A stretch of 63,780 nt of DNA, filler included, from Octopus bimaculoides (lineage: Eukaryota), in assembly GCF_001194135.2 (NCBI RefSeq). It is 4 parts of 4 records of this genome, joined end to end, with 100 filler letters (N's around TTAATTAATTAA, not from the genome) between each part and the next. Parts side by side here need not be neighbours in the genome. Positions count along the whole stretch, not along the records: positions 28,599 to 39,270 come from NW_026328969.1; 3 more parts are not named here. The stretch is one strand, 5' to 3'. Made by a program: the position numbers and the translations under genes. The notes beneath the pieces are model-generated. The model did not search any database and was not told the origin of the DNA. It was given only the letters and a program-made list of their open reading frames with translations. Positions 1,805 to 39,270 of the stretch are shown here, in pieces; positions within the stretch are counted from its first letter, which is position 1, and each line of letters starts with the position of its first letter.

Positions 1805-1848
<44 letters not shown>

Positions 1849-1856
1849 CATTATTT
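1755..1856. repeat. (TAT)n/(TAC)n microsatellite
   Basis: Directly visible. Confidence 0.95.
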
Positions 1857-4104: not shown

Positions 4105-4199
4105 CCTTAGAATATTGTGTGTACACTGTTCCACTCGCACTTTTAAATATTTTTAAAAGTAGCAAAACTTAATATAGTGTGGTATTTTAATATCTACCA

Positions 4200-5691: not shown

Positions 5692-5726
<35 letters not shown>

Positions 5727-5741
5727 CGTGTGTGTCGGCAC

Positions 5742-5908: not shown

Positions 5909-6182
5909 CTTCCAATATATTTGAAGAAAGATACGTGTTCCAAAATTTCAATTTAGGAAAGCACGTCTAACTTTCCAGAGCAATCCTCATAACGAATAAA
6001 TGCTTTATTGTGGTTTGTTATGAGGCCTAGCATGTTATATTACAATGACATACTATCCACAGATGTTTGTTGAACTTAAGAACTGTGTGCTATAACGTCA
6101 CAGACATCAGCGTAGAGTTAGAGAGGAGTGTAGTTTAAAATTTAGCTGCTTGAGGTTGAGCAATTTAACAGTTCTGCTATAA

Positions 6183-6224
<42 letters not shown>

Positions 6225-7084: not shown

Positions 7085-7272
7085 ATCAATTTTGAGGTAG
7101 GGGTAAGAAGATTACATCGACCTCAGTGTTCAACTGGCAACTATTATCGATCCTGAAAGGATGAAACGTAAAGTCGACCTCGGCGGAGTTTGAACCCAGA
7201 ACCTGAAGACGGATGAAATGCCGCTAAGCATTTTGCCCGGCGCTGTAACGATTCGGCCAGCTCACTGCCTTA
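7085..7272 (-). mobile_element. SINE family A
   Basis: gtcgacctcggcggagtttgaacccagaac...ccgctaagcattttgcccggcg...ggccagctcactgcc. Confidence 0.85.
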
Positions 7273-7454
7273 ATACTACAGTAAATTATTGTACTTACGC
7301 TCTTCTCTTTATATGTCATGATAAATTATGTCTATGTAGAGGGCTCTAATGTATTGATGAGAGGAAGTGTTCAACCTGATTTGACATCAATGCAATTAAA
7401 TATACGTATTAGCGAGGGTGCTTTTAATGATCATTCGACCTTTCAGATCCACAA

Positions 7455-7564
<110 letters not shown>

Positions 7565-9483: not shown

Positions 9484-9563
<80 letters not shown>

Positions 9564-10092
9564 GTGTAATGACAGTTTAAACTAATATAAAATTTCTTTC
9601 TGATTGACTCGTAGCGAGAGGCGAATAATTATACGGTCTCCGGTAAATGACGGATAATATTTTTACTTCCACCGAAAAGAGGAATTGTTAAGTTGACCTT
9701 GGCAAGATTTGAACGCAAAGCCTAAAGAGGTAGATTTTAAGTTAAAAAAAAAAACCCAAGTACTTTGGGCAAGAGCGTTAACGATTCTACAAGATACAGG
9801 ATTTTCAGAAATCACTTCGAATTTAAAATATTCCTCTTGTCACTGGAATGCACCAGTACTACGAGATCCAGCAAAAATTGCGATAGAATTGAGAAGATAT
9901 TACGCATGTGCTTCAGCTGATCATTCTCAATGCTAGCAGACCAATTGGGAGAAGAAAGCGCAAAGAGACTTCCAAGTCCTAGCATTCAACGAATGAATTA
10001 TATGTCTATATGTATACACACACGTACACTCACATGGATATATATATATGTATATACAGACACACACTGACACAGTCTTTTTCTCTCTCCCT

Positions 10093-15822: not shown

Positions 15823-17577
15823 CCATCATTTAACGCATGCGCATATGTGCAAATCCGTGAAATATTCACGCTTATTTACGTGACAGATATGTGCAATTTA
15901 ACTAAAGTTTTATGAAATGTACAGAACATTTTTTTATGGGGGGAAATGGAAAAATAAGAGTGAATATTTATTTTATGAGTGCTGAGTATTCGGTTTATAA
16001 AATTGTGCATAAAGTATATAAAGTGTATATAAAGTACATTAAGTAATCATCGTATTCCAGTTCCTTTCACTTTTCAATGTGTAGCAGATAAGCGACTATC
16101 TTTCCATACAGACACAGCACAGGCTACAATTTCAAAGTTTTTGGATAAAGTTTTCAGAAATAACCCGATAGGTTTACCATTAATTCTGTGAAATATTCAC
16201 TGGTCCCGCCAGTAATAGAATTATACCTGAAAACATGTATTTCAGTATCTTGTACGTGTTTATATTTTTCAAACTAACCATGGAATTTCCAGAGGAACGA
16301 GTAGTGATAAATACTTAATCCTGTACTACAGCTTGAATTAAGTATATAAATAGTTTGAATGTAAACGTAATCGTTCAGTTCCTATTGAAGAGAAACACAC
16401 ATAGGAAGATATCAGTACATGGCATTCTTCATTAAATAATTTATGAAAGAGGCGAATTTGTAATGTCAGAAACAAAATGATGATTAACGTAATTCTGGAA
16501 TATACGATAAGCTGCAGTAACAGATGATAGGATACACTGCTTGAAGATTGAACAATATTTTGGATGACAGCCAGTGGAGGCCGAAATGCTGTGAATTAGG
16601 GAATCTGGTACTTCTTTTTACTCTGCCTAATATGCTATTGATTGTATGCGACGAATTACATAAGTTATCAGACTGTTTTGGAAGCTGTAATTACGACTGT
16701 CAATGTATAGCAAGAGAAATACAAAAGAAAATTTCTCTGATGTAGCGTTCCAAGTGTTAAAATATGATGCTAAATGTTCCCATGACTTCTGGATAGTATA
16801 AAGTTCGGCAGTTTTGCGATATAGTAGTTTCGGAGGAAGAAGTTCTTTGGTGATTTCCCTCTTCCGACAAAAAAATAAAAGATAAAAAATAACATAATTC
16901 TAATAAAAGAAGTAATTTTCAACAAAATACGATGTTTGTTCTTTTGGTGTCAAACAGCCTTATGTATCATTGTTGATTTTTCTTTGTTAAATTTCCTTGT
17001 TGATTTCCGATTGAATACAGTAACACGAGGAATTAAATGAGGTGGGTAATTAAACATATCAGTAATAACGGGATGCAGAAAATTAATGGGAAATAACTGA
17101 AGATATTTTTTGCAAAAGGCAAAAAACAATTTGTTTAATAAATGTACCTGATGCGCACTTAAATATATTTGGTATATGTGTGTAGCTGAGTTCCATCAAT
17201 ACAAGCGAGTAAAAGACATCCAAGAGAATGCTATGATTGTAACTGATTTCTTCTGTCCACTCAATGTGTTTACAAGGATTTGGTTGCAATCTAAAATGAC
17301 CACCTTGGTTTTCTCCCAAATTATCAGAGCCGTCATGCAAAGAGTGATAATTAAATGCATGTCACTTGCTAAATCCACCATGAAAAATTTCTAATGAGTA
17401 ATGCCGAGTTTAATTTTATGTCTCTATTCCTAGTTTTGTAAATTTATTGCTCTTATGTTAACACCGATAAGCGTTTTTCCCGTAGTCACTAAAGGCACTT
17501 TATAAGTATAAAGTGACTTCTGCGGAACCATATTCGAACTTGAGCACTGCAATCCAAGCACAATATATCACTCAATC

Positions 17578-18013
17578 TTAGAGGCTGGCAGAATCCTTCG
17601 AACACCCGCAAAATGCTTAGTGGCATTTCGTCTGTCTTTACGTTCTAAGTTTAAATTCCACCGAAGTCTACTTTGCCTATCATCCTCTTGGGGTCGATAA
17701 AATAAGTACCGGTTGAGACTGGGGTCCATATAATCGATTTATCTCGCTTCCCCGAAATTGCTGGCCTTGTGCCAAAATTTGAAACACTATTACTCCAGCT
17801 TAGAAGGCAGCGAACTGGTGGAGTCGTTAGTACGCCGGGCAAAATGCTTAGCGGCATTTTGTCTCTCCTTAAGTTCTGAGCTCATATACTGCCAAAGTGA
17901 CTTTTCATTTCAGCCTTCGAAATCGATAAAATAAGTACCAGTTGAATCATTCCCATCTTCAAAATTGCTGGCTTTGTGCCAAAGTATAAAACAAATATTA
18001 CTGCAGCTTAGAA
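17578..18013 (+). mobile_element. Two tandem SINE family A copies
   Basis: Copy 1 ~17578-17790, copy 2 ~17805-17995. Copy 2 is flanked by tattact(c/g)cagcttagaa. Confidence 0.8.
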
Positions 18014-18398
18014 CTATGGACTACGATCGGCTATGTTATTTATATAGATCAAAGAAAGCTCGATTTTCCAAAGTATTTTATCCACAAGGGCAGAAAAATA
18101 TGATTATCAACATTACAACGCAGTCCATTTCTCAATATGTTCTGAGATATGACTTCGACTCATCTATTCGTGCATTCGTGTCTACCCAGTGAAGCACGCA
18201 TTTATCCGGAATAAAATGAAACTCGCACGACTAAAATTAATTTAACTGCTTATCCTTTTTTTAATAAATGCATTCATACATTTATTTATCCTTTTATTTA
18301 TCAATATCCTTTGTAATTACTCTTCTAAGCATGTATATTTACTGCTCGTTCCAAGCAAGACATAAATCACTTATTTGCAACGGCAATATGCATATACA

Positions 18399-18435
<37 letters not shown>

Positions 18436-18526
18436 CAGTTTATACGACTGTGCAGTTGTGTGCGTGTGTAAGTATTTATATATGTATATACATATATGTG
18501 TGTGTGTATGTATGTCGATTTATAAG

Positions 18527-18565
<39 letters not shown>

Positions 18566-19740
18566 ATGCATGTATGTATGTATGTATGTATGTGTGTGCA
18601 TTTATTCACGGTATAATTTCTATTAAATTATATTTATTTATATGTATACATGCATATATATGCATAAACATTATTATTGCTGTTGTTGTTGTTAATATTA
18701 TTATTTTTATTTTCATCATCATCATCATTATTATTATTATTCTTATCATCATATACGTATATAATTTATATTTATAATTATCATATTAGATACCTGCCAT
18801 TAATACATTTTTAAAACGTTAACTTCAAATATATACACGTGTATGTGTGTCCGCGGGCACACATGTTTTATGATATCAAAACAATGCTAACAACTACGAT
18901 TAACTGGAAATAAAGACACTAGTAATATTTTAACGAAATAAATCGATATCACTCATACTTCTACTCAGAGATGTGTGTTTGCAAATGTATAAACAAACTC
19001 TCTTCAAACACACACATAGATAGATAGATAGATATCTTTCTATTATAGCCACACAGGGCTAAATACAGAAAATGGACAAATTACAAAGTAGAGCTTTTCT
19101 TGGGAGTGGGGATAATTTGGATCAAAAGGGATCGCGGGAAGAAAAAAATATTTTTAAAAANNNNNNNNNNNNNNNNNNNNNNNNNNNNNNNNNNNNNNNN
19201 NNNNNNNNNNNNNNNNNNNNNNNNNNNNNNNNNNNNNNNNNNNNNNNNNNNNNNNNNNNNNNNNNNNNNNNNNNNNNNNNNNNNNNNNNNNNNNNNNNNN
19301 NNNNNNNNNNNNNNNNNNNNNNNNNNNNNNNNNNNNNNNNNNNNNNNNNNNNNNNNNNNNNNNNNNNNNNNNNNNNNNNNNNNNNNNNNNNNNNNNNNNN
19401 NNNNNNNNNNNNNNNNNNNNNNNNNNNNNNNNNNNNNNNNNNNNNNNNNNNNNNNNNNNNNNNNNNNNNNNNNNNNNNNNNNNNNNNNNNNNNNNNNNNN
19501 NNNNNNNNNNNNNNNNNNNNNNNNNNNNNNNNNNNNNNNNNNNNNNNNNNNNNNNNNNNNNNNNNNNNNNNNNNNNNNNNNNNNNNNNNNNNNNNNNNNN
19601 NNNNNNNNNNNNNNNNNNNNNNNNNNNNNNNNNNNNNNNNNNNNNNNNNNNNNNNNNNNNNNNNNNNNNNNNNNNNNNNNNNNNNNNNNNTGATGCCACC
19701 TCCGCCCGGCCTTTTAGAGATAACTTTCTCTCAGCCCATG

Positions 19741-19794
19741 TATAGATAGATAGATAGATAGATAGATATATAGATAGATAGATAGATAGATAGT

Positions 19795-19869
<75 letters not shown>

Positions 19870-19907
19870 GCAGGAAGGCAGGCAGACAGGCAGGCAGACA
19901 TACAGAC

Positions 19908-19961
<54 letters not shown>

Positions 19962-19997
19962 GTAGATAGATAAATAGATAGATAGATAGATAGATAT
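19741..19997. repeat. Compound (GATA)n/(GACA)n/(GGCA)n microsatellite
   Basis: Directly visible. Further (GATA)n tracts at 12599-12652 and ~14613-14676. Confidence 0.95.
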
Positions 19998-20548
19998 GCA
20001 AAATTAGTTAAAGGAAATAAGTCAAGTGAGTCAATGTTGTGATCCGTGTATGCTTGCCTACGTAGATATGCGAGTATATATAGATACGTTTGTATGCATT
20101 CATATAATTATATACACCAAAAGAGTAAATGAAAGTGAGAGAGACAGAGAGAGAGAGAAAGAAATGTGTGTGTGTGTTTTCGTTTATATACGCTAGTGGA
20201 ACGACACAAAGACAAGGATATTACAACTTGTGAACATTCTCTATCAACGTTCTGCATGCAGCTATCATTTTAACTTTTATGGCATCTTACATATTATATA
20301 AGAATAAATGGTTTCGTTTTGTGATTTTTCATATCATTCCAATCAACCGCCAACTTTTGAATATCCTTAATTCCACAAGGAAATTATTATCAATACTGTC
20401 AGTAAAATCTCCCATATTTTCGTTTCGTTTACATATAACACGCATGCACATACACACACACTTGCATATATGTATATAGATACATATATAACTGTAATGG
20501 TTTAAATACATATGTGTATAAGTAATTATCCATCCATCTACTTATCGA

Positions 20549-20622
<74 letters not shown>

Positions 20623-21329
20623 TACATATGAAAGTATATGCGTGTATGTATGTAAATATGCATATATATATATATCTACATACATTCATATATATATTCT
20701 TAGATACGTGTGTTCATATCTGCGTTTTTGTATCTGCATGCATATCTATTTGGGCGTCGCTAAACGAAAAGAAGAAATAAATTATGTAAAGACTTAAATA
20801 CATATATTTAATAAAGAAACAGAAAGAGATACAGCAATTAAAGAGAAAAAAGCGAAAAGAAAAACATTAAAAATAACGTGAGACTAAGGTAGAGAAGCAG
20901 TGAACACACGAAGACACAGAAATAGTGAGTCATTCATTGTATGAATAATCTTTCTTCGAGATAAGCTTGTATATGACATTCGGATTGTTAGATTAAATTG
21001 TTGTATTTCGTCATCGGACATCCGTTGCTTGCGGGGATCTGTGCACATTATCCACCGATCCAAAAACAAGAGCCTTAGGTTTTCTCATTAGTAGCTTAGG
21101 ACATCGAATCCTCTGCTGTTTTTATTTGCCCTCAAGATCTTTAACCGAAACGAAGGATATTAGAAAATATATTTTACCAATAAACAGTAATATAAATAAT
21201 CCAGCGATACAGACATAACCACATTCATTTACACACACAGACGTAATTGAAAAAGAGAGAATGAAAAATGAAAAAGAGAGAAGTAGGATGGGATGGAGAA
21301 AGAATAAATGCTTGACGAAGGAGAAAATA

Positions 21330-21490
21330 GCAAATTATTGATACTGGCAGAACCGTTAATGCATCGGAAAGAGAAAAAAAACACATTTTTCAGTATTTTT
21401 CCTAGTTCTCTATTTTATATTCTGAGTTCAAATTCCACCGAGCTCCACTTTGTCTTTTATCCTTTCGGGTTCAATAAAATAAGTACCAGA
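21330..21490 (+). mobile_element. SINE family A 5' part, followed by the LTR-like repeat at 21497
   Basis: ctggcagaaccgtta...ttctgagttcaaattccaccgag...aataaaataagtaccag. More SINE-like sequence resumes at ~21700-21810. Confidence 0.7.
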
Positions 21491-21496
21491 ATGTTT

Positions 21497-21657
21497 TGTC
21501 GACGACTCCAGGCGAAGAAGTAGGATCTCCGAAGACATATAAATAGAGGTAGTCTGGCCGTGGTAGGAGTTTTGAGTAGCAGTCGAGTAGCAGTTGTGTA
21601 GCGGTTGAGTAGAGATCATCCGAAGGTGCTAGATAGCATTAGCGTTGAGACATAACA
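21497..21657 (+). repeat. ~162-bp TG...CA-bounded repeat with TATAAATA, copy 2
   Basis: Same boundaries as copy 1. TATAAATA at 21538-21545. Confidence 0.55.
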
Positions 21658-22447
21658 TAGAAGATCACAAAGATTGATGTAAACCACCTGTCTCTTCTAT
21701 CATCAAAATGCTGGTCTTGCGCCGAAATTTCAAACCATTATTATAATTTCATCATTTTGAGGTCGTCGAAATAATTACCAGTTGAGTACTGGGGTGATGT
21801 AATCGGCTAGTTTCTATTACACAAGCACATTTCAGATCATTTGCAATAGTATAAAGAATTAATGTGTAGTAGTAGTAGTAGTAGTATATGCTATCTTATT
21901 GCTACAAGTATTATGGGTGTATGTTTGAGTGAATATGCGTGTTTGTATATGTGTGTGCGTGTATCTATGCTCTCGTTAACAATACTACCGACACACTCAC
22001 AAATTTAATATCGTCCACGTTTACAAAGACGGAAACTGCACAAATACTTACGAATATTTCGACTTCATTGTAAGTAAACTGAAACGCTAATTCGTATACA
22101 TATCTCTACGGTATGCAAATGTCAAAACTTAGCAGATATATTCACAATAAGTATTCGTTTTATGATACTATTATTTAAACATTAGGCGTGTCTTGGTATC
22201 GTGTGTTCATTGATTATTCTAAAGACTTTTATTCTTTTCCTCAAGCGCATATGCATAATCTAACGCACAAATACATACATATACACACAGACACAAACAC
22301 ACCCCATCCACATACGGACACGCTATATACATTTATATATATATACATTTATATATATATATATATATATATGTATATGTACATACACATATATATGCGT
22401 ACACATGCATACATACATATGTATACATATATATGCATATTATATAA

Positions 22448-22553
<106 letters not shown>

Positions 22554-25243
22554 CAAATGGGTATGGGAAAATAGCTAGGAAGTTATGGGCCTGCGAACTT
22601 AATGTAAATACAGTAGGATCTCATACATGTTATATAATGATTTGGAATTGAAAATTTTAATTTTCTGCTTCGGCAAAACAAAGTTCATATAAATACTTAC
22701 ATATGCACAGATACATAATACATACTTATATGTGCACAGATACATAATAAATAAACTCGCTTAAATGCAAACTCACTAACACACCTACAATTGCATGCAA
22801 AAAATGAAAACACCCTATTACAAAAATGATGAGATTAACCAATGAAGTCCCGAGATAAACACCACCCAATCAATGAATACGCAAAATTAACCAATGAAAC
22901 ACAACCAAGAGACTGCTCACACAGACACACACAAATACATACACACCCCAAAGGACCTAAATACACTCCCAATACCGAGCTGCAACAGTTCTTGCCTTAA
23001 GATCGCAGTGGGGTAAAACTCATGTGGTAAAACAAACTTTCAGTTCCAATAAAAATCAAGTTATATTCTCTGCAACATATATTGATCACTTCTTTCTTAT
23101 TTGTCTGATGTAAATTAATATACTACCTACCAATATTATATATATATATATATATAACTACAAGTAGAAAGATATATTTTCAACGCGTAAACATTGAACA
23201 GTATATATGTACATGGGATAGAATACTTTTAAGAACATTTGTCGGCACTAGCAACCATGAGAAACGAACTCATACCCTTCTAATAACCGGTCAGAGTGCT
23301 CTACATTTAAGCTAAACTGCCGACCAACAAATTCTTCTGCAATTTTAGAAGTTATAAAATCATCGAGAAGCGCTAGATGTTTACGTCATATATAAACAAA
23401 CATAAGTTTGCTTTTGAAGTGTTGAAATGTAGTATAGAACAAGAATAAAGATATAATTTCGAACGCGTTCCTTCGCTTATACTTCTCTTTCATAAAGAAG
23501 CCCTTGCATTCAACAATTTACGAAGTTCTCGAACATGCATTACTCAATAAATATTTTACAAAAATAGAAAACAATAAACATTGAATATAACAAGAATTTC
23601 AAATTTACCATTATTCTGGTATTCGTTTCAACGGTTTTAAGTTCTAGTCTTATTAGTAACAATTTTACACGATTTTAAGCTTGGCCCAGTAACCCATATT
23701 TTTATTCTTGAGCATGGGCAAAGAAAAAAACTTGCCCTTTTGTGATTATAGCTTTGTATCGAGCATTAACTTGGAGTGGCGAGTAATATCTTAAAAGAAC
23801 GACGGACACTGCATTTTAACGTTAGAAGTACTCTTCCTGTTCGTGTATTGTAGAATTAATATTCCACTCTCTACATGTTCATTTACTATTTATCGTTTCC
23901 TTCTTGCCAGATTCGTAAATATAAGTTATTTTCAGGTGTATTTGGATTTTTCGATGAGAAATTACATACTAATCAACATGCTCTCTTTTTCTCTATTTCT
24001 TCCTTTACAAATTACACATCACTTTACATTTCTTATGCATGGCAATAATACACAAAGAAAATTTGGGTGAGAAGTGCCGTCCATTGGCCCGGGAAAATTT
24101 GTAATGCAAAGAGTACGACAAAGAAGTGCAATACGTAATTCAACTGTTCAAATATACAAGAGTTAATTGCAAGTCAGATAGGTAAACAATTTCTCAGTCA
24201 CAAAGAAACGGCTACAATTCAAACTGCAGAATGAAGACGAAGAATATTTCAAGAAGGCAAAATTTGACGTGAAATGGAGAGAAAAGGAAATGGTGACAAA
24301 AAAAGAAACCTAAAAAGAAAGAAGGAAGGTTTCGGTTTGAAAGACATATAAATCAAGAACGGCGAAATAAAATGCCTAAAGAAAAAACAGCAAGGCTTGG
24401 AAAAGAAAAGAAATAACTAAAAGACTGCAAGCAGAGGAAGCACAAAAAAGCTAATTGCTGGAGATAAATCGAGGATTTTATTGTTCGCGAAATTTAGGAA
24501 ACGAGAATCGGTACAAGAGAAAGTAATGGAAATACTATTCAAAATAAAAGAAATACGCAAGACCAGAACACTGGAGTCATCAGCAATGCTTTTCAAAAGA
24601 ACTGTTTTTTTTTCTTTTTTTTTTCTTTTTTCCCTTTTACTTTTTGCCATTCATGTGGGTTTATGAATATTGTTTGATAATCTATTAGCGGCAAACGGTA
24701 AATCGAAAATACTTTGTCAGAAAGATAAAATCATATTGGCTAACCGAAGAGAAACACCATATTCGCTATATATTTAGCAACTCCCAAAGTCCCAGTTACA
24801 AACATTTCAAAGACAACAGCAGTTTTTGCACCTCACCATTTTCTTCTTCTTCACTAGGAGTTCAGATATCTTATTTCAGGCATGTTCATGGTTAAATTTA
24901 CCATTGCACCAGCAATCTGAATCTTTGTAGATCTCTTCAATTTATCCAAGTTAAAATAACTGATTCGAAATGGCCTACGATATTAATTATATTATAGATT
25001 CAGAATAATAAACAGTGCATTCCTCAAATTGTGACTACTTTAAATTAAATTATTAGGGACGAATAAAATCCTAAAATTTGAAAATGAGGAAATTCAACAA
25101 GCATTATATTCGAATATCAGTCATCAGTACAGCTTGCAAGAGAAACTAGAACAACAATTGTAAATACAGTTCTATATTTAAGAGATGGGGAATTATGTAC
25201 ATTATTTACACTATTTACATTTGTCCTCATCATGTTTGTTGTT

Positions 25244-28598: not shown

Positions 28599-28639
28599 TA
28601 TATATAACGTGATCAGCCAGACTATCAGATATTACACAT

Positions 28640-29880
28640 CACTTTTCACCATGCACTGTGCACACACATATACAGAAGAACATTCTTAGAAGATGACACA
28701 GGTAGTAACCATGATCAGGTCATGAACTTCAGAGTGTACTTGAAGAGAATAAATCAACTCAAGGACCTCACTAAGCTTAAAGACCCTGCTATCACTGAAG
28801 AATTTCAAGCAACACTTGATGGAAAATTTTCACCACTGCTCCTCCTTGAAGATAACCTTACGTGAGATTCTGGCAAAAAGCCATTGCACATCCAAACTAT
28901 GGGTTATAGACAAAATATTGGGCATGTGTTTCAAAAGGAGTGAATTAAAGAAGGATAAGAATACAAAAGAACAAAGAACAAAATATATGACATCAACAAG
29001 AAAATTAAGAAAAGAGTAATTGAAGCAGAACAAAGATGGGAAACTGAACAACAAAAGGATATTGAAGGTAGCCTGCTAGCAACAACACGAAAAAGCATTT
29101 CATTTAGTAAAAAAGTTCACCAAAAGAAATAAATAAGCCAACAGCAAATGCCATCATAAGCAAATATAGTAAAAAGCTTACAGAACAAAAAAAAAAAAGG
29201 AAAAGAAGAAGGAAACAGAAAGTTGGGCTACAGAGCTACCAGAGCAGTGGAGATCCAAGTGTGTTAGCATACAGGTGTCTTTGTATGGCAATGACTACCT
29301 AATCATGCAAGATGAAGTTAAAGCTGCAGAAAGGTTCCTGAAAGATGGAAAATCAATAGGAGTTGACAACATCCTAGCTGAACTGAAGAAGCACAGAAAA
29401 GAAACAACATTCTTATGGCAACCTTCAATAAAATATGGCATACTGGTGAATGGCTAACCCCATTGACTCAGTCACTGATCATAATGTTTCTCAAGAAAGG
29501 CAGAATTATCACACCATCTTGAAGATCAGCTATGTAAGCTAAGTAATGCTCAGAGATATTCGGAATAGACTAGGACCCAGGAAGAACATATAGCTGAGGA
29601 ACGAGAGGGCTTATGTAAAAGTAGCAGTACCACTGAGAATATCTTCAGCCTGTGTGTGAAATACCTCTAACAACAAAAAAAGGCTTTACTATGTCTTTGT
29701 AGATTTTAAAAAGGTGTTAGATAAGAGTTTGGCATGATGCTGTATGGTCCCTAATGAGAACATTCAACATGGGAACAGAAATTGACGCATTATTCAACAG
29801 CTAGGGCAGTGTTCATAAAAGAGTGGTTCAATAATACCATAGGAATCAATCAGGGCTGCCTTCTCTCATCCATTTCTTCC
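28640..29880 (+). mobile_element. Decayed RTE-clade LINE ORF2 fragment (linker plus reverse transcriptase N-terminal part)
   Basis: Across frames: EEFQATLDGKF, KDGKSIGVDNILAELKK, TQSLIIMFLKKG, STTENIFSL, YVFVDFKKVLDKVWHDAVW and GINQGCLLS. Confidence 0.85.
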
Positions 29881-31139
29881 TAGAGTAGATAATGAATTGA
29901 AGACTAAATCCTTTCTTGCTGCCAATTCTCATCTATTTCCAAACAAGTCTTCCCCATCATTAGACATGTTTCTTAGAGGTTAGAAACAAAGGACACCACT
30001 TGGATGGACTAGAAACAATACCTATTCGTAAGAGACAACTAGCAAATAGGTATTGTTTAAACCAGATAAACCAATCACAACTAGTAATCAGATAGTTATA
30101 TCAGACACAATGTACAACTGGCAGCTTAGTGACTAGTGTTTGTAAAATCAGACAAGAAGAATATTTAATACCATAGTTACTAGCTGTGGTTATGGACAAG
30201 AGACAGTAACTAGGAACTGTGGTGTAAACAAGATGGTAAGGCTAGTGAAAAAAGTGAAGACAGCTGAAGTCAAACAGAAGTAAATCCACATAATTTGACA
30301 TCAAAGACATTCTTTCCGCAGCAATATAGTAAATATAAGGATACTAGCATAGTATTCAGTGTAAAGATGAAAGAATGCTACAGCAAATGGCAGGATACAT
30401 CAAGAAAATTTAAGAACGTAGCAGTGGCGCAGTGACTTTGAGAGATACATTGTTATTTGTGGAAATTTTTACTATTATAAACCTAATCCATATATGTTAA
30501 AATAATTACGTGGAACTTCATTTACTTTCACTTTCATTTAAGGTAATAGCGACACCTTAAGAGTGCAGGCATGGCGAACTTTATTGTGTATGCATATCTT
30601 CACGAATAAATTGGTTCCCAATTTCTTGTCTAGTAAATCTGAAGCAGGGCAGAGGTTACCCATAATTTGCTTTCATTTTCTCATTTACATTATAGTGAAA
30701 ACTTAAGGGTGCATATATTAAGAACCCCGGTGTGTGTGCAATATGTCTTTCTCCATAAATTGATGCTCAGTTTCTTGATAGGTAAATCTGAAGTAGTATA
30801 AAGATTATTCAATAATTCAATACTTTAGTTTGCAGCTTGTGGAATCCTTATCTAACGAAAATGATGCAAAGCTTGTTTGCTGCAGGAGTTAAGCCATCAT
30901 CTCTGAATCACTTCCGACTCTCAACTATTCATAAGTCCAACATATTTCGAGACACAATTCTTAAATGTCACAATGCAGGCTAGCAATTCAATTCGTTGTA
31001 GATTAAACTGTCTGTGTACTCTACCGCTTTAAAAGATTGTTTACTTAAATTTTGTATTATTCACATATTACATCTAATGATATTGTTTACATAACATCTG
31101 ATATTAAATTTAGCAGCAACAGTAGAGCTCCAGATAGAA

Positions 31140-31310
31140 GGCCTTAACCGTATTTAGTAACATCCTTTTATTGCCCGAGTTAAAATCCCGCCGAAGTTGA
31201 CCTTGCCTTTCCTCCTTATGGGGGTCAATAAAATGAGTACCAGACTGGATTTATTTAATAGACTGTGTTGCGTTCCCTAAAATGTGTGGCCATGTCACAG
31301 TATATGAAAT
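31140..31310 (+). mobile_element. SINE family A (diverged); a further diverged minus copy at ~31640-31770
   Basis: gagttaaaatcccgccgaagttgaccttgcctttcctccttatggggtcaataaaatgagtaccag. Confidence 0.65.
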
Positions 31311-32459
31311 CATTACTGACATTAATAATTAAGTTTATACCATTAAAGTTACATAACAGAAATATAATTAAAACTAATGATAATGCCCTAAATATTTAAA
31401 AAGACTAAGCAAAAATATATTGCACGTCTGGGTTATAAACTAAAATAATAAAACAATTCAAGGGGATTTGAAAATTCAGAAAATATATTGGATTATCGAA
31501 ATGGAAAAGCAATGACATATAAGAGGATGGAAACCAGAGCACCTGATTGCGACATACCATTTAATATTGTGAGTGTCTTTTGTGATAACGTACAAGCCAC
31601 GTACACACAATAGCAATAATAATAATAATAATATTTTCTTACGTGGGCGCAAGGCCAGATATTTGGTGAGAGGGAACTGTCGAATATATAGACCCTAGAA
31701 TTTTACTGGTACTTTATTTTATCGAAACAGGTAGGATGAAAGACTAAGTAGTCCTCAGCAGGGTTTAATAATACATATACGTGATTACGAACACATTCAT
31801 TAAAGACAGAAAACTGCTTACAAAGAGAAAGGAATTATGTAAGGATTATCTCTCATAAATAATTTTAAATATTTCTAAATTATTTCAGAAACAATTAATA
31901 CCTAATTATGAATAGCAATCGTATTGATTAATAAAAAGATCTATATAAAACGGAGAAAAATCGACCAGATCCCTTAACAGAAAATATGCTAGCAACACAA
32001 TTATCAAACTATGTACAAGACAAATGCCGTATAGAAACAAACTTCGAGTTTTCACGAGACAATTTCAAATTTTTAACGAGTTCCTTTTTGAATTCAAATA
32101 ATGAAAAATAAAATTGGAATCATTTTTAATTTCAATTAAACGAAAACAAAATTGTACAGGAAAGGGAAGTAAAACTGTTCTTTAATCTATAAGAAATCTG
32201 ATTAAAAATAACTTCAGTGAACTTTCTTAAAGTTATAAACTTAATGATAGGCCAAAGCAATATAAAGAGTTTTTTTATTGATAGTCATGAATGTTTTCGG
32301 TTAAGTGGCTTCGGTAAAGAACCAAGAGGATTGCTTTAATTTGACTGTAATCCTTGTTAGAAGCAGGCGATAAACCAAAATGAAATGGGATAGGTTGTGC
32401 CATAGGAATGAAATCTAAATTGGAGGATTGCAAAAAGAGAAAGTAATGACAAAACTCAC

Positions 32460-32618
32460 TTCAGGAAGATTTGAACGACATGTGGGGCAGTAATTCTCCA
32501 TACATAAGACTCTCAGTCGTGTGGAGCACTTGTAGCAGATGGGATGATCGCAAACACCTACAGCAAAAATGGTTATCTCATCGCTGCAGACAACACAAAT
32601 ATTTTCTTCCCCTTCCAT
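32460..32618 (-). CDS. ZNF598: First recognisable coding exon of E3 ubiquitin ligase ZNF598 (Hel2 orthologue), N-terminal C3HC4 RING
   Basis: ATG at 32618 reads MEGEENICVVCSDEITIFAVGVCDHPICYKCSTRLRVLCMENYCPTCRSNLPE (53 codons), matching the ZNF598 RING pattern C-x2-C...CDHPxCxxCSTxxRVLC...YCxxCR. It ends at a canonical phase-0 donor GAA|gtgagt. The ORF-track start at 32624 is a TTG. Confidence 0.93.
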
Positions 32619-33025
32619 AGCCAACAGTTAATAAAACTGCCAAATCAATTTTTTAAAACAACTACTTTAATGCTGTTTTTGTAATAAAGAAACCTCGAAG
32701 CAGGCTGAAGTTTGTGCCAAACCGACACAAGCTAAAGAGGGAATAGTATGCCAAGTATGAATACTACATCATAACTATGCGAGTATTACGTGGCAACACA
32801 AACATTTCTCTTAAGGCGAAATCATCCGAATAAAATATTATTTTACTTTTTAAAATTACTTGTCTAGATGTAATTTCTATTTAGAAATAATCAATTTTCA
32901 ATACAATAAAAAAATTAATAAACAATTTTAACTTTGACGTACTGCGTCTCGGCTTGAGTTCTTAATTTATTGCACATAATTGTTGACGTCACAGTGTTTT
33001 GCGTAGTTATTGAAACAAATCCAAG
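32619..33025. promoter_or_regulatory. Putative shared (bidirectional) promoter and 5' UTR region between ZNF598 and synaptogyrin
   Basis: 407 bp between two divergent ATGs, with no transposon or microsatellite recognised in it. TSS positions cannot be seen from sequence. Confidence 0.7.
32984..32991. promoter_or_regulatory. Full palindromic CRE (TGACGTCA)
   Basis: Exact consensus 34 bp upstream of the synaptogyrin ATG. Related ACGT-core motifs at 32935-32942 (TGACGTAC) and 32786-32794 (TTACGTGGC). Confidence 0.45.
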
Positions 33026-33127
33026 ATGTCGAGTGGAGGTGCTTATGGTGCTGGCAAAGCTGGTGTTGCATTCGACCCTCTGGTATTCTTCCAACGGCCA
33101 CAGGTTATTATTCGGATAATTAGTTGG
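33026..33127 (+). CDS. SYNGR: First coding exon of synaptogyrin (MARVEL-domain synaptic vesicle protein)
   Basis: ATG at 33026 reads MSSGGAYGAGKAGVAFDPLVFFQRPQVIIRIISW (34 codons), matching the synaptogyrin N-terminal signature GGAYGAGKAGxAFDP...P..I.R..SW. Phase-0 donor TGG|gtatgt. Too short for the ORF track. Confidence 0.93.
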
Positions 33128-35646
33128 GTATGTGGTTGTGTTTTACTCTAATTTCCTCACACGATTACTTATTCTGTTTTCTTTACCAGTCGCCTCTGTC
33201 AAACCTTCTTTCCACCTCATACAATCTACCTAATGTTACCACCTAATCAGCTACACCTCGATCTATCAAAGATCAGTGGTCCAGATAGTTTATAATTAAC
33301 TGCTTACTATGGTTAATAGCTAAATTCCTTTTGTAAATTATGCATTTTTTCTCGTCTTTTATGTTGATCAATTGATTCTTCAGTCGATCACACTTTAATT
33401 TCATTTGGTCCGTTCTATTTTTTTTTTTTTTTTCTTGTTACAACAAAATTTTATCAACTGACTTTTATCTTTCTCTTACAAATATAATTTTTGTACAGAT
33501 GTTTCTTCTTTCCAAAATCATGTCTTGTGCCTAACTAAAATATTAGCTCCTTTTTATCATTAATTCTTTAAAAAACGAAACCATCTTTTATTGAATAGAA
33601 AGAGAAAGTAGCAGAGGCTCTCCTAATTATATATTCATTGAGACAAGAATCGAAGGACCAAAAATATATCCAGACATCTATTTCACTACTTAACGCTGTT
33701 GCATTCATTATTTCTTTCATTTACTGTTAACATACCTTGTTTACTATTAAAAAAGATAATTTTCGGTAACTATATTCATACCAAATCCAACATTAGATTC
33801 TACACAATCAAAACTTCGATTCCATTTAACCATTTATTTTCTGTTTATTTTTATCTGAAGCTATTTTATTGTCGAATTGACTATATTTACGTAATCTTAA
33901 TTTCTCGTGCGATTGGACACCTGCTTTTGTTCTATGAATTAATAAATTTCATTTAATTACTCATCTGAGTTTTCAGAATTTAGAAGCGTATTTTTTTCTT
34001 TAACTTTTACAAGCTCTAAAGACACATACACGCATTACTTCAAAGATCAAGTGGACCAGTATTGAAATAAAACTAAATGCGTGATGTAGTTTTGTTAAAT
34101 CACTAATTTATCATAGCATAGGTATCAAAATATCTTTATCATGGCAACAATAAAGAATGTGTGTCTGTGTGTGTCCTGCAAGGTTACACCATCCCAGCTT
34201 AGCTGTTGCTACACTTTCTAGTTTATTCCCACTGGTTGATATATTTTATCTTTTTAGTTGCAGATAGATGAAATTACAGTACATTTATTGTGAACTAAAA
34301 TGCTGTTGTCACTAATTACTATTCTATTTCTATTTTTTATCTTTGCCATACATCTACAGTTTTGACAGTCACCCTTACAGATTTTTTTTTTTTTGTCCTA
34401 TCGAAATCCCCCGATTTTATTTTTGTCTTTGATGTATGAGCAATCAGTATGCGACTATGCAAATTGTGGAATGTGGAAGTATTATAATGTTTTATTAGCC
34501 CAACCACCCACCTTTTGCAGCGGAGAAATCCTACTGTTTGCTCATGCTACTACTATTTAGTACAAGCAGCTACCGTCGCCGCCACCACCACCGCTGCTGC
34601 TGCTGTCGTACTTTCACTTTTGCTTCTCTGCCTGTTAATCGCTGCTGCTACAGCACAAACCTAAATTCCTCAACCGATCATTTTCCCATCTGTTCACCTT
34701 TCCAACTGGTGATCAGTGCAAATAGTAACAGTGTTAGGTATTTGTGTATGTATATATGATAGAAAGATGGAAGGATAGATAGATCCTGTGTGGGTGTAAT
34801 ACACACGCATATAAAGTCATAATGTAGCTTACTGGCCATGAAAAAAACGTAGAATGATTTAATGTCTGTTTTAGTTAGTGGTCATTGTTTCATAACCAAA
34901 TGTGTTTTTTATTTCGCTTCTAAAATTTTAGAACACTCCCAACACCCAGTCGAAGTAGGATGTTTAGTGGTAGCTGTGAATTTAATACGTCTAGTTTTAC
35001 ATTTTTTCTCTTCTTTTATTCTTTTTAAAATGTCATTTCCTCTATTATTGAGTACCAAGGAGATACTAGACATTTTAGAAATTATTAAATTGTTATATAT
35101 TTTATTACTGTGGCCCTTTCCATTTAATCAAATTGTCGGAGTTCCAATTCACTGAAAATTTTATTTCGCCGTTTTTTTGTTTTTTTTTTCCTATCGGTTT
35201 TTTTTTCTCCTATCATCGAATTTATGCATACTTATTATGTAATTGCTCGTCCCAAAGATTTCTCTCTCTCTCTCTCTCTCTCTGTGACACACACACACAC
35301 ACACACATACACACACTCACACGTCATTTCAGCCGTTCGATTTATTATAATCATTCCTCCCCTTCCTTTCTTCATTGAATAACCCACTTCCTTTGGTGTC
35401 TTCCTTATGCCTGATTACATTTCTGTTTATGATTTTATTATAGATTTCCAAATCCCAATATTGCTTTACGAATGTTTGATCTGAACGCATTTTCTGTTTC
35501 TCTGATGCGGGGCATAGTTGAATAATTACAATAATTAACAGTAATTACAACATATGAAGACTTCGGCTGTAGCGATTTTCCAAGTGGTGGAATTGTTAGT
35601 TACATGACTACTACATTGGGAAATACGAATAGACATATCCTTAATA

Positions 35647-35712
<66 letters not shown>

Positions 35713-36000
35713 CCACGTATATATTATATGCATATTAATATATGTGTATCAGTGTACTCATTTATGTTTTCTGATGTCAGATCAGTTCCAGAGTCTTTTC
35801 TTGTAACCTTGAAAAATCAATGTCGTATATTATATAGCCATACGAAACTAGATGTACATAGGCACGCATAATATATGTTATATAATTATAATACACGCAT
35901 CTATCTAGTGACATATATATATATATATATCGTGAATTATATATTAATACTAAAACAATATATATATATATTATCGTGAATTATATATTAATACTAAAAT

Positions 36001-36082
<82 letters not shown>

Positions 36083-36167
36083 AAATGCTTGTGTTCCAAT
36101 GTGTGTGTATGTATATATATTTGTATATACATATGTGTGTATGTGAATATTTCTAATATGGATGTGT

Positions 36168-36330
36168 ATCATCATTTAACGTTCGTCTTCCATGCTGGTA
36201 TTGGTTAGACGGTTCGACAATGTCTGATGAGTTAGAGGACTGCATCGTGCTCTGGAATTTGTTTTGGCATGGTTTCTATGGCAGAAGGCTCTTCCTAACG
36301 CCAACCACTTTACAGAATGTACAGGGTATG
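36168..36330 (-). mobile_element. 3' end of an RTE-type LINE or RTE-tailed SINE
   Basis: Forward catcatttaacgttcgtcttccatgctgg...ggcatggtttctatggcagaaggctcttcctaacgccaacc is the reverse complement of a typical RTE 3' UTR with (GAT)n tail. A tail-only copy lies at ~56470-56510. Confidence 0.6.
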
Positions 36331-37977
36331 AATTTGCTATGTAACCCATTAGACTAAAATATCCCCTTGACTGAGAGGGAGTATAGAAGAGAAGGAGGCA
36401 GCTATACACAAGATATTGATAATTAAAGAATGAAAGAGGAACAAAAACAATGTGGTTACCCCACGTTAAGGGTGGGCGGGAGTTATTGGGGGTGATGCCA
36501 GAAAGAGAGATAAAGATGGTGGTGATGAGGTATCAGCATACCCTCAAGGTACAGCAGGAATGAATAAAAGAGAGAGACTGGAGACAAGATCAGGATGGGT
36601 TGATGGTGAAAATTGTAAGAGTGTGGGAAAAGAGGGAGAAATAGTTAAGAGTGGAGGGGTGGTCATTAATAAATATGAATTGGGAGAGGTGGTAAGGAAG
36701 TGGGTCAGAGGAGAAGATGTTATGATTCACAATACTGAAAGAATGAAAAGCAGCAAAATAAAACTGTTGACAGGATCAGAATGAGATAGGGCGAGATAAG
36801 TGAAAGTGGGTGGGTAAAAGTTACAAGACTTGTGGTGGGGGAGAGACACACTAAGAGATCTATGCTGATAGGGGTGAAGCAGGGCAAAAGTACATAGAGG
36901 TGAATGTAACCAGAGGCAAACAAAAATGAGGGTTCTGGTTGACAGGACATAAGAATGAAGTATGGGTGTAAAGAGGGAAGGAGAGATATCTAATCACTTT
37001 ACAAAGGTGATCAATAGAGAATAAGATGAAAGGGACAGTATTAAGAGTGTTTTTTTTTTTTCTGTGTCTCATTAGTTGATCAATCGAGAATAAGAGGTGA
37101 GAGGGAGACAATATTAAGAGTGTGTATGTATTTTTGTGACTATGTATATCATCATCTTTTGGCATCTGTCATTCATGCTAGCATGAGTTGATCATCTTAT
37201 AGTTACATGTGTGTCTGGGTCAGATAACAGAAACATCTGGCTCAGTCATCTCCATCACCAAAGTTCATGCTGTTGTGTCAGCCATGTCACTTACCTTAGT
37301 GAGTAATGTTGTAAGGGAAGGAGTCAAAAGACCTAAATAGCTGTTTCGCTGCCTGATGAGATATCAACTGCAATCAGAGGAGAGTAGCAATATCTTCAGC
37401 ACACACGTGTTTACCCTAAAAATGTGTCTGCAACATGCATATGTATATTGTATATGAATACATGTAAATAAATATGCATATATATCTTGTATATAATAAA
37501 ATGGAAGATGTGTGTGTGTGTAGGCCTTTTTCTCGATCCTCCTTAAAATCAATATCTTTCTGAATTCGCACACGCTGGGAGCATACATCACTGATGTTCT
37601 AGAGATGGTCATAGACTCTTCAAATTTTCCACATAATGAGTAATGCCGCCCCTAGGGGACAAAAACTCCTATTCGATAAATAAAAAATTCCAACGATCGT
37701 TGCTTCAAGGGACATTACTCTTGATGGTGTAGCTATGCTACTTTAACTTCATCTTCTACTACAGTTTTTACTATGCACATTCACTGTAAACTGCCAGTAT
37801 TTGCACATTAGCGATTCCTTGTGGTAGCCATGCAATTTAAATCAACTTTCAATTAATTTTAAATGCCTTCAGACATTAGTCCATATTATATTCTCTGCTT
37901 CTACTCATACAAAGTTGTGACAATTATACAGTTTTTACAATGTCCATTCACTGCCAACTGCTGATATTTGCACATTA

Positions 37978-38570
37978 GCACAGAGCTGTCCTTGCACCTA
38001 CAAATGCTGGTGTAACCACTCTTAACTACAACCTACTCAGTAAGCTGCCTTCTTGAGAACGTTGTTACAGATCAGTTGACACTGTTATCAACCTCTATCA
38101 GGTTACATCCTTTTCAACAGAACTTCTCAACTCTCAACATCCTCCCCAAGAACTTCACTTAAAAGTCGGTTGCTCTGTCATCCTCCTATGCAATCTAAAC
38201 ACACCCACACTATGCAATGGAACTCACTTTGTGGTCAAACAAATGATGGGCCACGTCATTGAAGCCCAAATTATCACAAGAAATGGCAAAAACGATGCCA
38301 TTTTTGTTCCGAAAATTCCGCCAATCCCAGCAGACTGCCCCTACTGTACACGGAGATGTCAGTTCCCTCTCAAACTCAGCTTCATCATGATAACTAACAA
38401 AACCCCAGGTCAATCACTGAAAGTTGTCGGATTGTACCTTTGAAAGTCATGCTTTTCACATGGACAGTTCTATGTCGGTTGTTCCAGAGTTGGCCATCCA
38501 GATAACTTATTTACCTATGCTCCTGAAGGAAAAACGAAAAATGTCATTTACAAAGCAGCTCTACAGTAGT
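37978..38570 (+). mobile_element. Helitron Rep/Hel C-terminal PIF1-like helicase fragment (decayed)
   Basis: RAVLAPTN...ELHLKVGCSVILLCNLNTPTLCNGTHFVVKQMMGHVIEAQIITRNGKNDAIFVPKIP...RRCQFPLKLSFIMITNKTPGQSLKVVGLYL*KSCFSHGQFYVGCSRVG...KTKNVIYKAALQ*, the classic Helitron helicase C-terminus. Confidence 0.92.
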
Positions 38571-39270
38571 TACTCCTCTACTGTGATCTTCACATCTACG
38601 CCAAACTGTGGCCATTAGCAATCACTTCCTACAAGCATTTCATTGATATTTTGCTTCATTTCTGTGATTGCTGTTAGCAGAACATTACCTTCATTCATGC
38701 TGTTCATTTATAAGCATGCTCTGACATCTATTTATCTACATGCCATTATTCTATTTGTGTGTTTGCAATAAATGTTCGCTTTTGTTTATCATACATGACC
38801 TTCATTGAAAAATTCTTCAATGCAGCTATGTTGGGCATTATGAGTAAAATAACTACATGCTACAAAACACTTTAGGTAAGATATTGGATCCCTAATACCT
38901 ACTGCAATTCTGATCTCATTTCATAGACATTCATTTATTACTAACTTCCAAATAAGTGATCACAAAACTTCATTCATTACCTAGGGTGCTTAATACCATA
39001 TAATAAACTGCTAACGAAATTGGTAATTCCACATTTTATATTTATCAACTATGAATGACTACATATATAGATATATATATACATATGTGTGTATATATAT
39101 ATATATATAATATATATATTTATTTATTTATTTATTTATGGGTTTCAGCCAAGTGGCTGTGGTCATGCTAGAGCACCACCGTGACTTTCCGTCTTTATGC
39201 TGTGCTCTCTTCACGTTCACTGCATGGCTCTTCTCCTCCACCTGATATAGTCCAATCAAGTGTTTTGATG

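What the first reader, a model, noticed from the sequence alone, without database searches (positions are those of the whole stretch)
32460..33127. ZNF598 and synaptogyrin head-to-head: possible ancient microsynteny with human SYNGR3-ZNF598
Seen: the two start codons are 407 bp apart on opposite strands, in a region otherwise saturated with repeats. From memory (needs verification), human SYNGR3 and ZNF598 are immediate neighbours on 16p13.3, but tail-to-tail. Inference: either a bilaterian-age linkage kept through a local inversion, even in a heavily rearranged coleoid genome, or a convergent adjacency. A shared promoter would couple a ribosome-collision E3 ligase with a synaptic vesicle protein.
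Basis: partly seen in the sequence, partly recalled or inferred. Interest (0 to 1): 0.75.

Follow-up and report, generated by a model that had tools for sequence, protein, structure and literature searches.

The report
Ancient ZNF598–synaptogyrin divergent gene pair
In this octopus sequence the first exons of a ribosome-quality-control ligase (ZNF598) and a synaptic-vesicle protein (synaptogyrin) point away from each other across only 407 bp, and the same back-to-back pair occurs in bivalves, a brachiopod, an annelid and a horseshoe crab, so it is an old, conserved gene pair and not an octopus oddity.

Summary
Window 32618-32460 (-) is ZNF598 coding exon 1, with a Pfam RING_ZNF598 match (E 1e-19) and 53/53 identity to Octopus vulgaris ZNF598. 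Window 33026-33127 (+) is synaptogyrin coding exon 1. The start codons are separated by 407 bp.

The same head-to-head pair, with gaps of 315-744 bp, occurs in O. vulgaris, Argonauta, two bivalves, Lingula, Owenia, Limulus and one metagenome contig. It is absent within 10 kb in amphioxus and in a nemertean. In a mammal (ferret) the genes are adjacent but tail-to-tail. Published gene lists put SYNGR3 next to ZNF598 in human and goat.

Octopus therefore keeps a layout at least as old as the protostome ancestor, and the vertebrate layout is probably the derived one. Going from one layout to the other is an order swap, which a single inversion cannot produce.

A perfect CRE (TGACGTCA) lies 26-45 bp upstream of the synaptogyrin ATG in five lineages, more than shuffled sequences ever gave. 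The spacer is not CpG-depleted, unlike its flanks.

Best reading: a compact two-way promoter region whose disruption is selected against. Start sites and co-expression were not tested. This is a new example of a known kind (conserved divergent gene pairs), of moderate interest.

The parts
32460..32618 (-). ZNF598 coding exon 1 (53 codons, most of the RING finger); donor GTGAGT follows at 32459
   Evidence: Translation. Pfam RING_ZNF598 E 1e-19. 53/53 identical to O. vulgaris ZNF598 P0154. tblastn with P0154 hits only here in the piece. The exon end after ...LP(E/K) is the same in all nine other ZNF598 loci inspected.
32619..33025 (.). 407-bp spacer between the two start codons; candidate two-way promoter plus both 5' UTRs
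   Evidence: GC 0.30, CpG observed/expected 1.17 against 0.50 for the piece. 97.1% identical to O. vulgaris against 90.3% for the whole piece, and 79% identical to Argonauta, where almost nothing else aligns. Spacers of the same kind, 315-744 bp, occur in eight other loci.
32984..32991 (.). Perfect palindromic cAMP-response element TGACGTCA, 34 nt upstream of the synaptogyrin ATG
   Evidence: It is the only full CRE in the 10.7-kb piece. It sits in a block of about 70 bp nearly invariant between Octopus and Argonauta. A full CRE lies 26-45 nt upstream of the ATG in Argopecten, Solemya and Lingula, with TGACGTAT in Owenia and TGACGTTG in L049 at the same place. Five of 7 lineages carry the full site, against a maximum of 2 in 2000 dinucleotide shuffles.
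32786..32793 (.). TTACGTGG, a bZIP/E-box-like site on the ZNF598 side of the spacer
   Evidence: It lies within TTGCCACGTAATACTCG, which is invariant between window, O. vulgaris and Argonauta. Its function is inferred only, and it was not checked outside octopods.
33026..33127 (+). Synaptogyrin coding exon 1 (34 codons); donor GTATGT follows at 33128
   Evidence: Translation. Identical to exon 1 of the MARVEL gene (PF01284) next to ZNF598 in O. vulgaris and Argonauta. 47-62% identical to exon 1 in seven other species, with the same exon end. The Lingula orthologue, rebuilt from DNA, is exactly XP_013417531.1 'synaptogyrin-1-like'. An exon-1 HMM hits only these loci, E 1e-18 to 1e-22.
28599..32459 (-). 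Start of ZNF598 intron 1, cut by the edge of the piece
   Evidence: No further ZNF598 exon found. No alignment to Argonauta. CpG observed/expected 0.06-0.2 at 28.6-30.2 kb.
33128..39270 (+). Start of synaptogyrin intron 1, cut by the edge of the piece. It holds four blocks conserved with Argonauta: 33550-33645, 34413-34751, 35316-35547, 35786-35847
   Evidence: blastn to Argonauta locus L002 gives 75-87% identity in these blocks only. No Rfam family or tRNA. Microsatellites at 35.2-36.2 kb.

Best explanation
The region is the 5' junction of two real genes, ZNF598 (ribosome-collision E3 ubiquitin ligase) and the octopus synaptogyrin. They are transcribed away from each other across a 407-bp spacer. 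This divergent pair is inherited rather than local: it dates back at least to the last common ancestor of protostomes, and octopus has kept it despite the reorganisation of coleoid genomes. It is probably homologous with the vertebrate SYNGR3-ZNF598 adjacency, where the order has been swapped to tail-to-tail. Proposed mechanism, inferred: the spacer holds both core promoters and both 5' UTRs in one compact region that is unmethylated in the germline. A CREB/ATF-type site is fixed about 30-45 bp from the synaptogyrin ATG. Any chromosomal break between the genes would damage at least one promoter, so breaks there are removed by selection and the pair travels as a unit. Shown: gene identities, spacing, cross-phylum conservation of order, orientation and exon boundaries, conservation of the CRE, and the CpG pattern. 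Inferred: promoter sharing, CRE function, and selection as the cause of persistence.
For: Gene identities. Head-to-head pairs, as bp between start codons: window 407; O. vulgaris 405 and Argonauta 401; Argopecten 372 and Solemya 441; Lingula 744; Owenia 315; Limulus 531; metagenome contig L049 440. Downstream synaptogyrin exons were confirmed by tblastn in Solemya, Lingula, Owenia, Limulus, ferret and L049. Ferret has NPW(-), ZNF598(+), then a 229-aa SYNGR3-like gene (-), with 4147 bp between the stop codons. Human and goat gene order. Spacer CpG observed/expected is 1.17 against 0.50 for the piece and <=0.2 in parts of the introns, and 0.70-1.49 in the other species. Between Octopus and Argonauta, conservation is concentrated on exon1-spacer-exon1. 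CRE conservation exceeds shuffles. In human, CREB binds preferentially at bidirectional promoters, often downstream of the start site (PMC2774331). Divergent orientation and spacers under 1 kb are over-represented among anciently conserved gene pairs (PMC3514665).
Against: No start-site, chromatin or expression data were available, so promoter sharing and co-regulation are untested. A CRE 34 nt from the ATG implies either a very short 5' UTR or a site inside the UTR. The pair is not indispensable: it is absent within 10 kb in amphioxus and in the nemertean Tubulanus, and it is rearranged in mammals, where the ferret SYNGR3 promoter is GC-rich with no proximal CRE. Limulus keeps the pair without a proximal CRE. 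From general knowledge, ZNF598 is broadly expressed and synaptogyrin largely neuronal, which argues against simple co-expression. No cnidarian, echinoderm, hemichordate, squid, Nautilus, chiton or insect locus could be examined.
Confidence: 0.7

Rival explanations
1. Passive persistence. The genes stay together only because a spacer of about 400 bp is a tiny target for breakpoints and most sampled genomes (scallop, Lingula, Owenia, Limulus) rearrange slowly. There is no regulatory coupling.
For: The pair has been lost or rearranged several times: amphioxus, Tubulanus and mammals. Limulus lacks the proximal CRE. No expression data link the two genes.
Against: The pair is retained in octopods, whose genomes are heavily reorganised (PMC9023564). 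The orientation and the sub-kb spacing are retained in five phylum-level lineages. A cis-element is conserved in position across phyla. Most neighbouring pairs do not survive such distances (PMC3514665).
Confidence: 0.25
2. The vertebrate SYNGR3-ZNF598 adjacency arose independently of the protostome pair (convergence), so the linkage is protostome-age and not bilaterian.
For: Amphioxus has ZNF598 head-to-head with NPHP3 and no synaptogyrin within 10 kb. The mammalian orientation differs and shares no promoter features. No other deuterostome was sampled.
Against: By inference, with about 20,000 genes, four SYNGR paralogues and two neighbour positions, the chance of adjacency is of the order of 4 in 10,000. 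The mammalian layout keeps the two genes on opposite strands, as expected from a simple order swap of the ancestral pair.
Confidence: 0.15
3. Bystander-type constraint. Enhancers of one gene lie inside the other gene, and that interdigitation locks the genes together, not a shared core promoter.
For: Four non-coding blocks conserved between Octopus and Argonauta lie in synaptogyrin intron 1. This mechanism is documented for many conserved pairs (PMC3514665).
Against: The conserved blocks lie in synaptogyrin's own intron. The 3.9 kb of ZNF598 intron 1 present here shows no conservation with Argonauta. Sub-kb divergent spacing is the typical signature of the promoter-sharing class.
Confidence: 0.1

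Closest known systems
Conserved ancient microsyntenic pairs with 5'-5' orientation (Irimia et al. 2012, PMC3514665), for example HSPE1-HSPD1 sharing a bidirectional promoter
   Same: Two unrelated genes, divergent orientation, spacer under 1 kb, with order and orientation kept across phyla.
   Different: The partners here have no evident common pathway, unlike HSPE1/HSPD1. Promoter sharing and co-expression are unproven. The pair is rearranged in vertebrates. Whether it is among the roughly 600 pairs in that study's supplementary list could not be checked, because the supplement is not held.
Human and mammalian SYNGR3-ZNF598 neighbours on 16p13.3
   Same: The same two gene families are immediate neighbours on opposite strands.
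   Different: They are tail-to-tail, with about 4.1 kb between stop codons in ferret. Each gene has its own promoter. NPW lies upstream of ZNF598. The SYNGR3 promoter is GC-rich without a proximal CRE.
CREB-bound bidirectional promoters in human (PMC2774331)
   Same: A full CRE lies in a divergent promoter under 1 kb, close to or downstream of the likely start site.
   Different: Binding of a CREB/ATF protein in octopus is not shown. The human study concerns GC-rich CpG-island promoters, whereas this spacer is 30% GC.
Metazoan microsyntenic blocks retained in cephalopods (Schmidbaur et al. 2022, PMC9023564)
   Same: An ancient gene linkage that survived the coleoid genome reorganisation.
   Different: Clusters of fewer than three genes were excluded from that study's compactness analysis. 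Neither ZNF598 nor synaptogyrin occurs in the supplementary text held.

Membership tests
ZNF598 / Hel2 E3 ubiquitin ligase | N-terminal ZNF598-type RING finger | tested here: met
   PF25447 RING_ZNF598 E 1e-19, 71 bits against a cutoff of 27. 53/53 identical to O. vulgaris ZNF598. 141 library proteins at E<=1e-10; every named one among those looked up is a ZNF598 or RING-type E3 ligase from an animal.
ZNF598 / Hel2 E3 ubiquitin ligase | C2H2 zinc fingers and C-terminal PAH-like domain | not testable with these tools
   These exons lie outside the piece. The orthologous O. vulgaris product carries PF23230 and PF23202.
Synaptogyrin (MARVEL superfamily) | Conserved N-terminal segment G-A-(Y/F)-G-A-G-x-A-G-x-x-F-D-P...KKPQVILR ending at a conserved intron | tested here: met
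   Alignment of eight exon-1 peptides gives 47-62% identity to the window, with the same exon end. The exon-1 HMM finds only the ZNF598-adjacent genes.
Synaptogyrin (MARVEL superfamily) | Four-helix MARVEL domain, and orthology to proteins named synaptogyrin | tested here: met
   This was not testable in the window itself. The O. vulgaris and Argonauta gene products with the identical exon 1 carry PF01284. The Lingula orthologue matches PF01284 at E 3e-27 and is XP_013417531.1 'synaptogyrin-1-like'.
Bidirectional promoter (divergent genes with start sites under 1 kb apart) | Divergent orientation with less than 1 kb between the genes | tested here: met
   407 bp between start codons.
Bidirectional promoter (divergent genes with start sites under 1 kb apart) | Mapped transcription start sites within the spacer, with activity in both directions | not testable with these tools
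   No transcript or CAGE data were available. The gene ranges returned by the tools are coding ranges only, as verified for Lingula.
Conserved ancient microsyntenic pair | Adjacency of orthologues in several distant phyla | tested here: met
   Mollusca (4 species), Brachiopoda, Annelida and Chelicerata are head-to-head. A mammal is adjacent tail-to-tail. The pair is absent in amphioxus and Tubulanus.
cAMP-response element (CREB/ATF site) | Palindrome TGACGTCA, conserved in position | tested here: met
   Window 32984-32991. Five of 7 lineages carry the full site, and 6 of 7 carry TGACGT/ACGTCA within 60 bp of the ATG. Shuffle maxima were 2 and 3 in 2000.
cAMP-response element (CREB/ATF site) | Bound by a bZIP factor and required for transcription | not testable with these tools
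   This needs ChIP or CUT&RUN and reporter mutagenesis.

The most novel reading that the evidence does not exclude
The spacer is a genuinely shared, CRE-dependent two-way promoter. Neuronal activity or cAMP signalling would then adjust the ribosome-collision sensor ZNF598 together with a synaptic-vesicle protein. On this reading the regulatory module is older than the protostome radiation, and vertebrates dismantled it after their genome duplications.
Probability: 0.1. Interest if true: 0.7.

Novelty: new member of a known kind. Interest (0 to 1): 0.42.

Why it matters
This is a clean, easily assayed case of a sub-kilobase divergent gene pair kept across at least four protostome phyla, with one transcription-factor site held at a fixed position. 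The spacer is short enough to clone whole into a two-way reporter. It can therefore test whether such pairs persist because their promoters overlap, because they are co-regulated, or only because the target for breakage is small. It provides a landmark of conserved local gene order in cephalopod genomes that are otherwise reorganised. The pairing of a translation-surveillance enzyme with a synaptic-vesicle protein has no obvious functional logic, so any demonstrated co-regulation would be informative.

Tried and rejected
- The word-indexed protein search with the 53-aa exon found nothing, although an exact match exists in the collection. The 34-aa exon was too short for that tool.
- Intronic ORFs gave no Pfam family, so the idea of a LINE reverse-transcriptase fragment at 29275-29457 is unsupported.
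- Rfam and tRNA scans of the piece gave only sub-threshold hits on simple repeats.
- Look-ups for a chiton (Liolophura, isoform X2) and marmoset (isoform X3) failed because only the longest isoform is on record.
- No paper mentions ZNF598 together with synaptogyrin, or synaptogyrin with microsynteny. The pair is not named in the Irimia 2012 main text or the Schmidbaur 2022 supplements.
- Searches for Drosophila gene identifiers and for a CREB-synaptogyrin link were uninformative.
- A k-mer screen for other motifs shared across phyla was dominated by AT-rich words indistinguishable from shuffles; only the CRE-related words stood out.
- The idea that the window is O. vulgaris itself was rejected: identity is 90.3% over 10.5 kb, so it is a congener.
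- 'One local inversion' as the link between the octopus and human layouts was rejected on geometric grounds.

Full report
**1. The observation**

- The minus strand carries an ATG at 32618 and an open frame of 53 codons to 32460, followed by the donor GTGAGT.
- The peptide MEGEENICVVCSDEITIFAVGVCDHPICYKCSTRLRVLCMENYCPTCRSNLPE matches Pfam RING_ZNF598 (PF25447) at E 1e-19, above the curated cutoff.
- It is identical over all 53 residues to the N-terminus of the NCBI protein 'E3 ubiquitin-protein ligase ZNF598 [Octopus vulgaris]' (P0154).
- The plus strand carries an ATG at 33026 and 34 codons to 33127, followed by GTATGT.
- The piece contains only these first coding exons. tblastn with the full O. 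vulgaris ZNF598 hit nothing else in the piece, and no further synaptogyrin exon was recognised; no octopus synaptogyrin protein was available to search for later exons.
- The piece is 90.3% identical to the O. vulgaris chromosome over 10.5 kb. It therefore comes from a congener, not from O. vulgaris itself.

**2. Identity of the right-hand gene**

- The 34-residue exon is too short for Pfam.
- In O. vulgaris and Argonauta hians, the gene lying head-to-head with ZNF598 starts with exactly this peptide, and its product carries the MARVEL domain PF01284.
- In Lingula the whole neighbouring gene lies inside the fetched locus. Only one combination of GT/AG splice sites gives the annotated length of 222 residues.
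- That rebuilt sequence is an exact match to XP_013417531.1 'synaptogyrin-1-like [Lingula anatina]', with MARVEL at E 3e-27.
- The exon-1 peptides of eight species align at 47-62% identity to the window and end at the same position.
- An HMM built from them finds only the ZNF598-adjacent genes among the 90 loci held.
- The gene is therefore the octopus synaptogyrin.

**3. The pair in other animals**

ZNF598 orthologues were found with an exhaustive HMMER search seeded by the window exon. They were named by cluster look-up and word-indexed searches, and their genomic surroundings were fetched. The ranges returned are coding ranges, verified for Lingula, so gaps are start codon to start codon.

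| Species or locus | Group | Arrangement | Gap |
|---|---|---|---|
| Window | octopod | head-to-head | 407 bp |
| Octopus vulgaris | octopod | head-to-head | 405 bp |
| Argonauta hians | octopod | head-to-head | 401 bp |
| Argopecten irradians | scallop | head-to-head | 372 bp |
| Solemya velum | protobranch bivalve | head-to-head | 441 bp |
| Lingula anatina | brachiopod | head-to-head | 744 bp |
| Owenia fusiformis | annelid | head-to-head | 315 bp |
| Limulus polyphemus | chelicerate | head-to-head | 531 bp |
| Metagenome contig L049 | unknown, spiralian-like | head-to-head | 440 bp |
| Branchiostoma hybrid | amphioxus | no synaptogyrin within 10 kb; NPHP3 is head-to-head with ZNF598, 918 bp away | n/a |
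| Tubulanus polymorphus | nemertean | no synaptogyrin within 10 kb; the neighbours are a thioredoxin/PDI-like gene, Nuf2, Ras-family genes and TEX33 | n/a |
| Mustela nigripes | ferret | adjacent, tail-to-tail | 4147 bp between stop codons |

- Exon 1 of each neighbour translates to the synaptogyrin N-terminus.
- tblastn with the Lingula protein finds the downstream exons in Solemya, Lingula, Owenia, Limulus and L049.
- For amphioxus and Tubulanus, both tblastn and the exon-1 HMM are negative across the 10 kb on each side.
- In ferret the order is NPW(-), ZNF598(+), then a 229-residue MARVEL gene on the minus strand. That gene's first exon, MEGASFGAGRAGAALDPVSFARRPQTLLRVASW, belongs to the same family.
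- Published gene-order lists put SYNGR3 next to ZNF598 in human and goat.

**4. What this means for history**

- Independent origin of the same divergent, sub-kilobase pair in four phyla is not credible. The pair was present at least in the protostome ancestor.
- By inference, the chance that ZNF598 borders one of four synaptogyrin paralogues in vertebrates by accident is of the order of 4 in 10,000. Homology of the vertebrate adjacency is therefore likely, but it currently rests on vertebrates alone among deuterostomes.
- The octopus layout is the common one, and the vertebrate layout is probably the derived one.
- The two layouts keep the genes on opposite strands and differ only in their order. 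That cannot result from one inversion. It needs two single-gene inversions, a transposition, or a tandem duplication of the pair followed by reciprocal loss.
- That last route is speculative.

**5. The spacer**

- Composition: it is AT-rich (GC 0.30) but not CpG-depleted. Observed/expected CpG is 1.17, against 0.50 for the piece and 0.06-0.2 in parts of the flanking introns. This is the usual mark of a region that stays unmethylated in the germline. The spacers of the other species give 0.70-1.49.
- Conservation: against Argonauta, almost the only alignable DNA is 32432-33308, which is exon 1, spacer and exon 1. Two strongly conserved blocks abut the two ATGs, and the AT-rich middle is less conserved.
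- CRE position: the block next to synaptogyrin contains the only perfect CRE (TGACGTCA, 32984-32991) in the 10.7-kb piece, 34 nt from the ATG.
  - A full CRE lies 30 nt upstream of the ATG in Argopecten, 26 nt in Solemya and 45 nt in Lingula.
  - Owenia has TGACGTAT and L049 has TGACGTTG at the same place. Limulus has none.
- CRE statistics: in 2000 dinucleotide-preserving shuffles, at most 2 of 7 lineages acquired a full CRE (5 observed). At most 3 had TGACGT/ACGTCA within 60 bp of the ATG (6 observed).
- Vertebrate contrast: the ferret SYNGR3 promoter is GC-rich with no proximal CRE.
- Context: in human, CREB binds preferentially at bidirectional promoters and often downstream of the start site (PMC2774331).

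**6. Mechanism**

- The best-supported reading is a compact region that holds both core promoters and both 5' UTRs. A break between the genes would cripple at least one of them, so the pair is inherited as a unit.
- This matches the class of anciently conserved 5'-5' pairs with very short spacers described by Irimia et al. (PMC3514665).
- Start sites, chromatin state and co-expression were not testable here.
- The repeated loss or rearrangement of the pair (amphioxus, nemertean, vertebrates) shows that the constraint is not absolute.
- Purely passive persistence, vertebrate convergence and enhancer interdigitation remain possible, at lower probability.

**7. Novelty**

- No paper in the searchable library mentions the two genes together in this sense.
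- The pair is not named in the Irimia main text or in the cephalopod microsynteny supplements held. The Irimia supplementary list could not be read.
- This is a new, well-documented example of a known phenomenon. It adds a cross-phylum, position-conserved CRE and corrects the polarity of the rearrangement. Interest is moderate.

Noticed in passing
window 33550-33645, 34413-34751, 35316-35547, 35786-35847: Four non-coding blocks in synaptogyrin intron 1 are 75-87% identical to Argonauta, while the surrounding intron does not align. They are candidate enhancers or unannotated exons. The 34413-34751 block is relatively GC-rich and holds a GCC/GCT-rich run.
   Followed up: partly
window 28599-30200 and 36400-37400 versus 31400-33200: CpG observed/expected is 0.06-0.2 in two intronic stretches and about 1.0-1.2 across roughly 1.8 kb centred on the spacer. 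This suggests methylated, transposon-derived DNA flanking an unmethylated promoter region. No transposon protein domain was detected.
   Followed up: partly
L005 (Branchiostoma hybrid) 1-10000: In amphioxus ZNF598 is head-to-head with NPHP3, 918 bp between start codons. ZNF598 has therefore acquired a different divergent partner there.
   Followed up: no
L007 (Lingula) 17328-22742; L006 (Tubulanus) 16050-17900 and 22404-24135: A small Ras/Rab-family gene lies just downstream of ZNF598 in both the brachiopod and the nemertean. This may be a second conserved neighbour relationship that outlived the loss of synaptogyrin adjacency in the nemertean.
   Followed up: no
L008 (Owenia) spacer, 207 nt from the synaptogyrin ATG: Owenia has its full CRE (GGTGACGTCAAAA) on the ZNF598 side of the spacer, about 100 bp upstream of the ZNF598 ATG, in addition to the 7/8 site near synaptogyrin.
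   Followed up: no
window 32689-32701 (minus strand, ZNF598 side): TTCCCTCTTTAGC is invariant between Octopus and Argonauta. It resembles a polypyrimidine (TCT/TOP-like) initiator of the kind found in translation-related genes. This is speculative.
   Followed up: no
window 33021-33025 and the equivalent positions in other loci: The bases just before the synaptogyrin ATG read (T)(T/C)CAA(G/A/T) in nearly all species, for example CCAAG, TCAAG, TCAAAG, TTCAAT. This start-codon context is conserved across phyla.
   Followed up: no
window 35287-35322, 35644-35692, 35913-36079, 39063-39139: There are (AC)n and long (AT)n microsatellites and a 44-bp tandem unit in synaptogyrin intron 1. They produce the only (spurious, sub-threshold) Rfam miRNA hits.
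   Followed up: yes
tool behaviour: The word-indexed protein search returned no hit for the 53-aa exon even though the collection holds a protein whose first 53 residues are identical. Short queries can give false negatives with that tool.
   Followed up: yes
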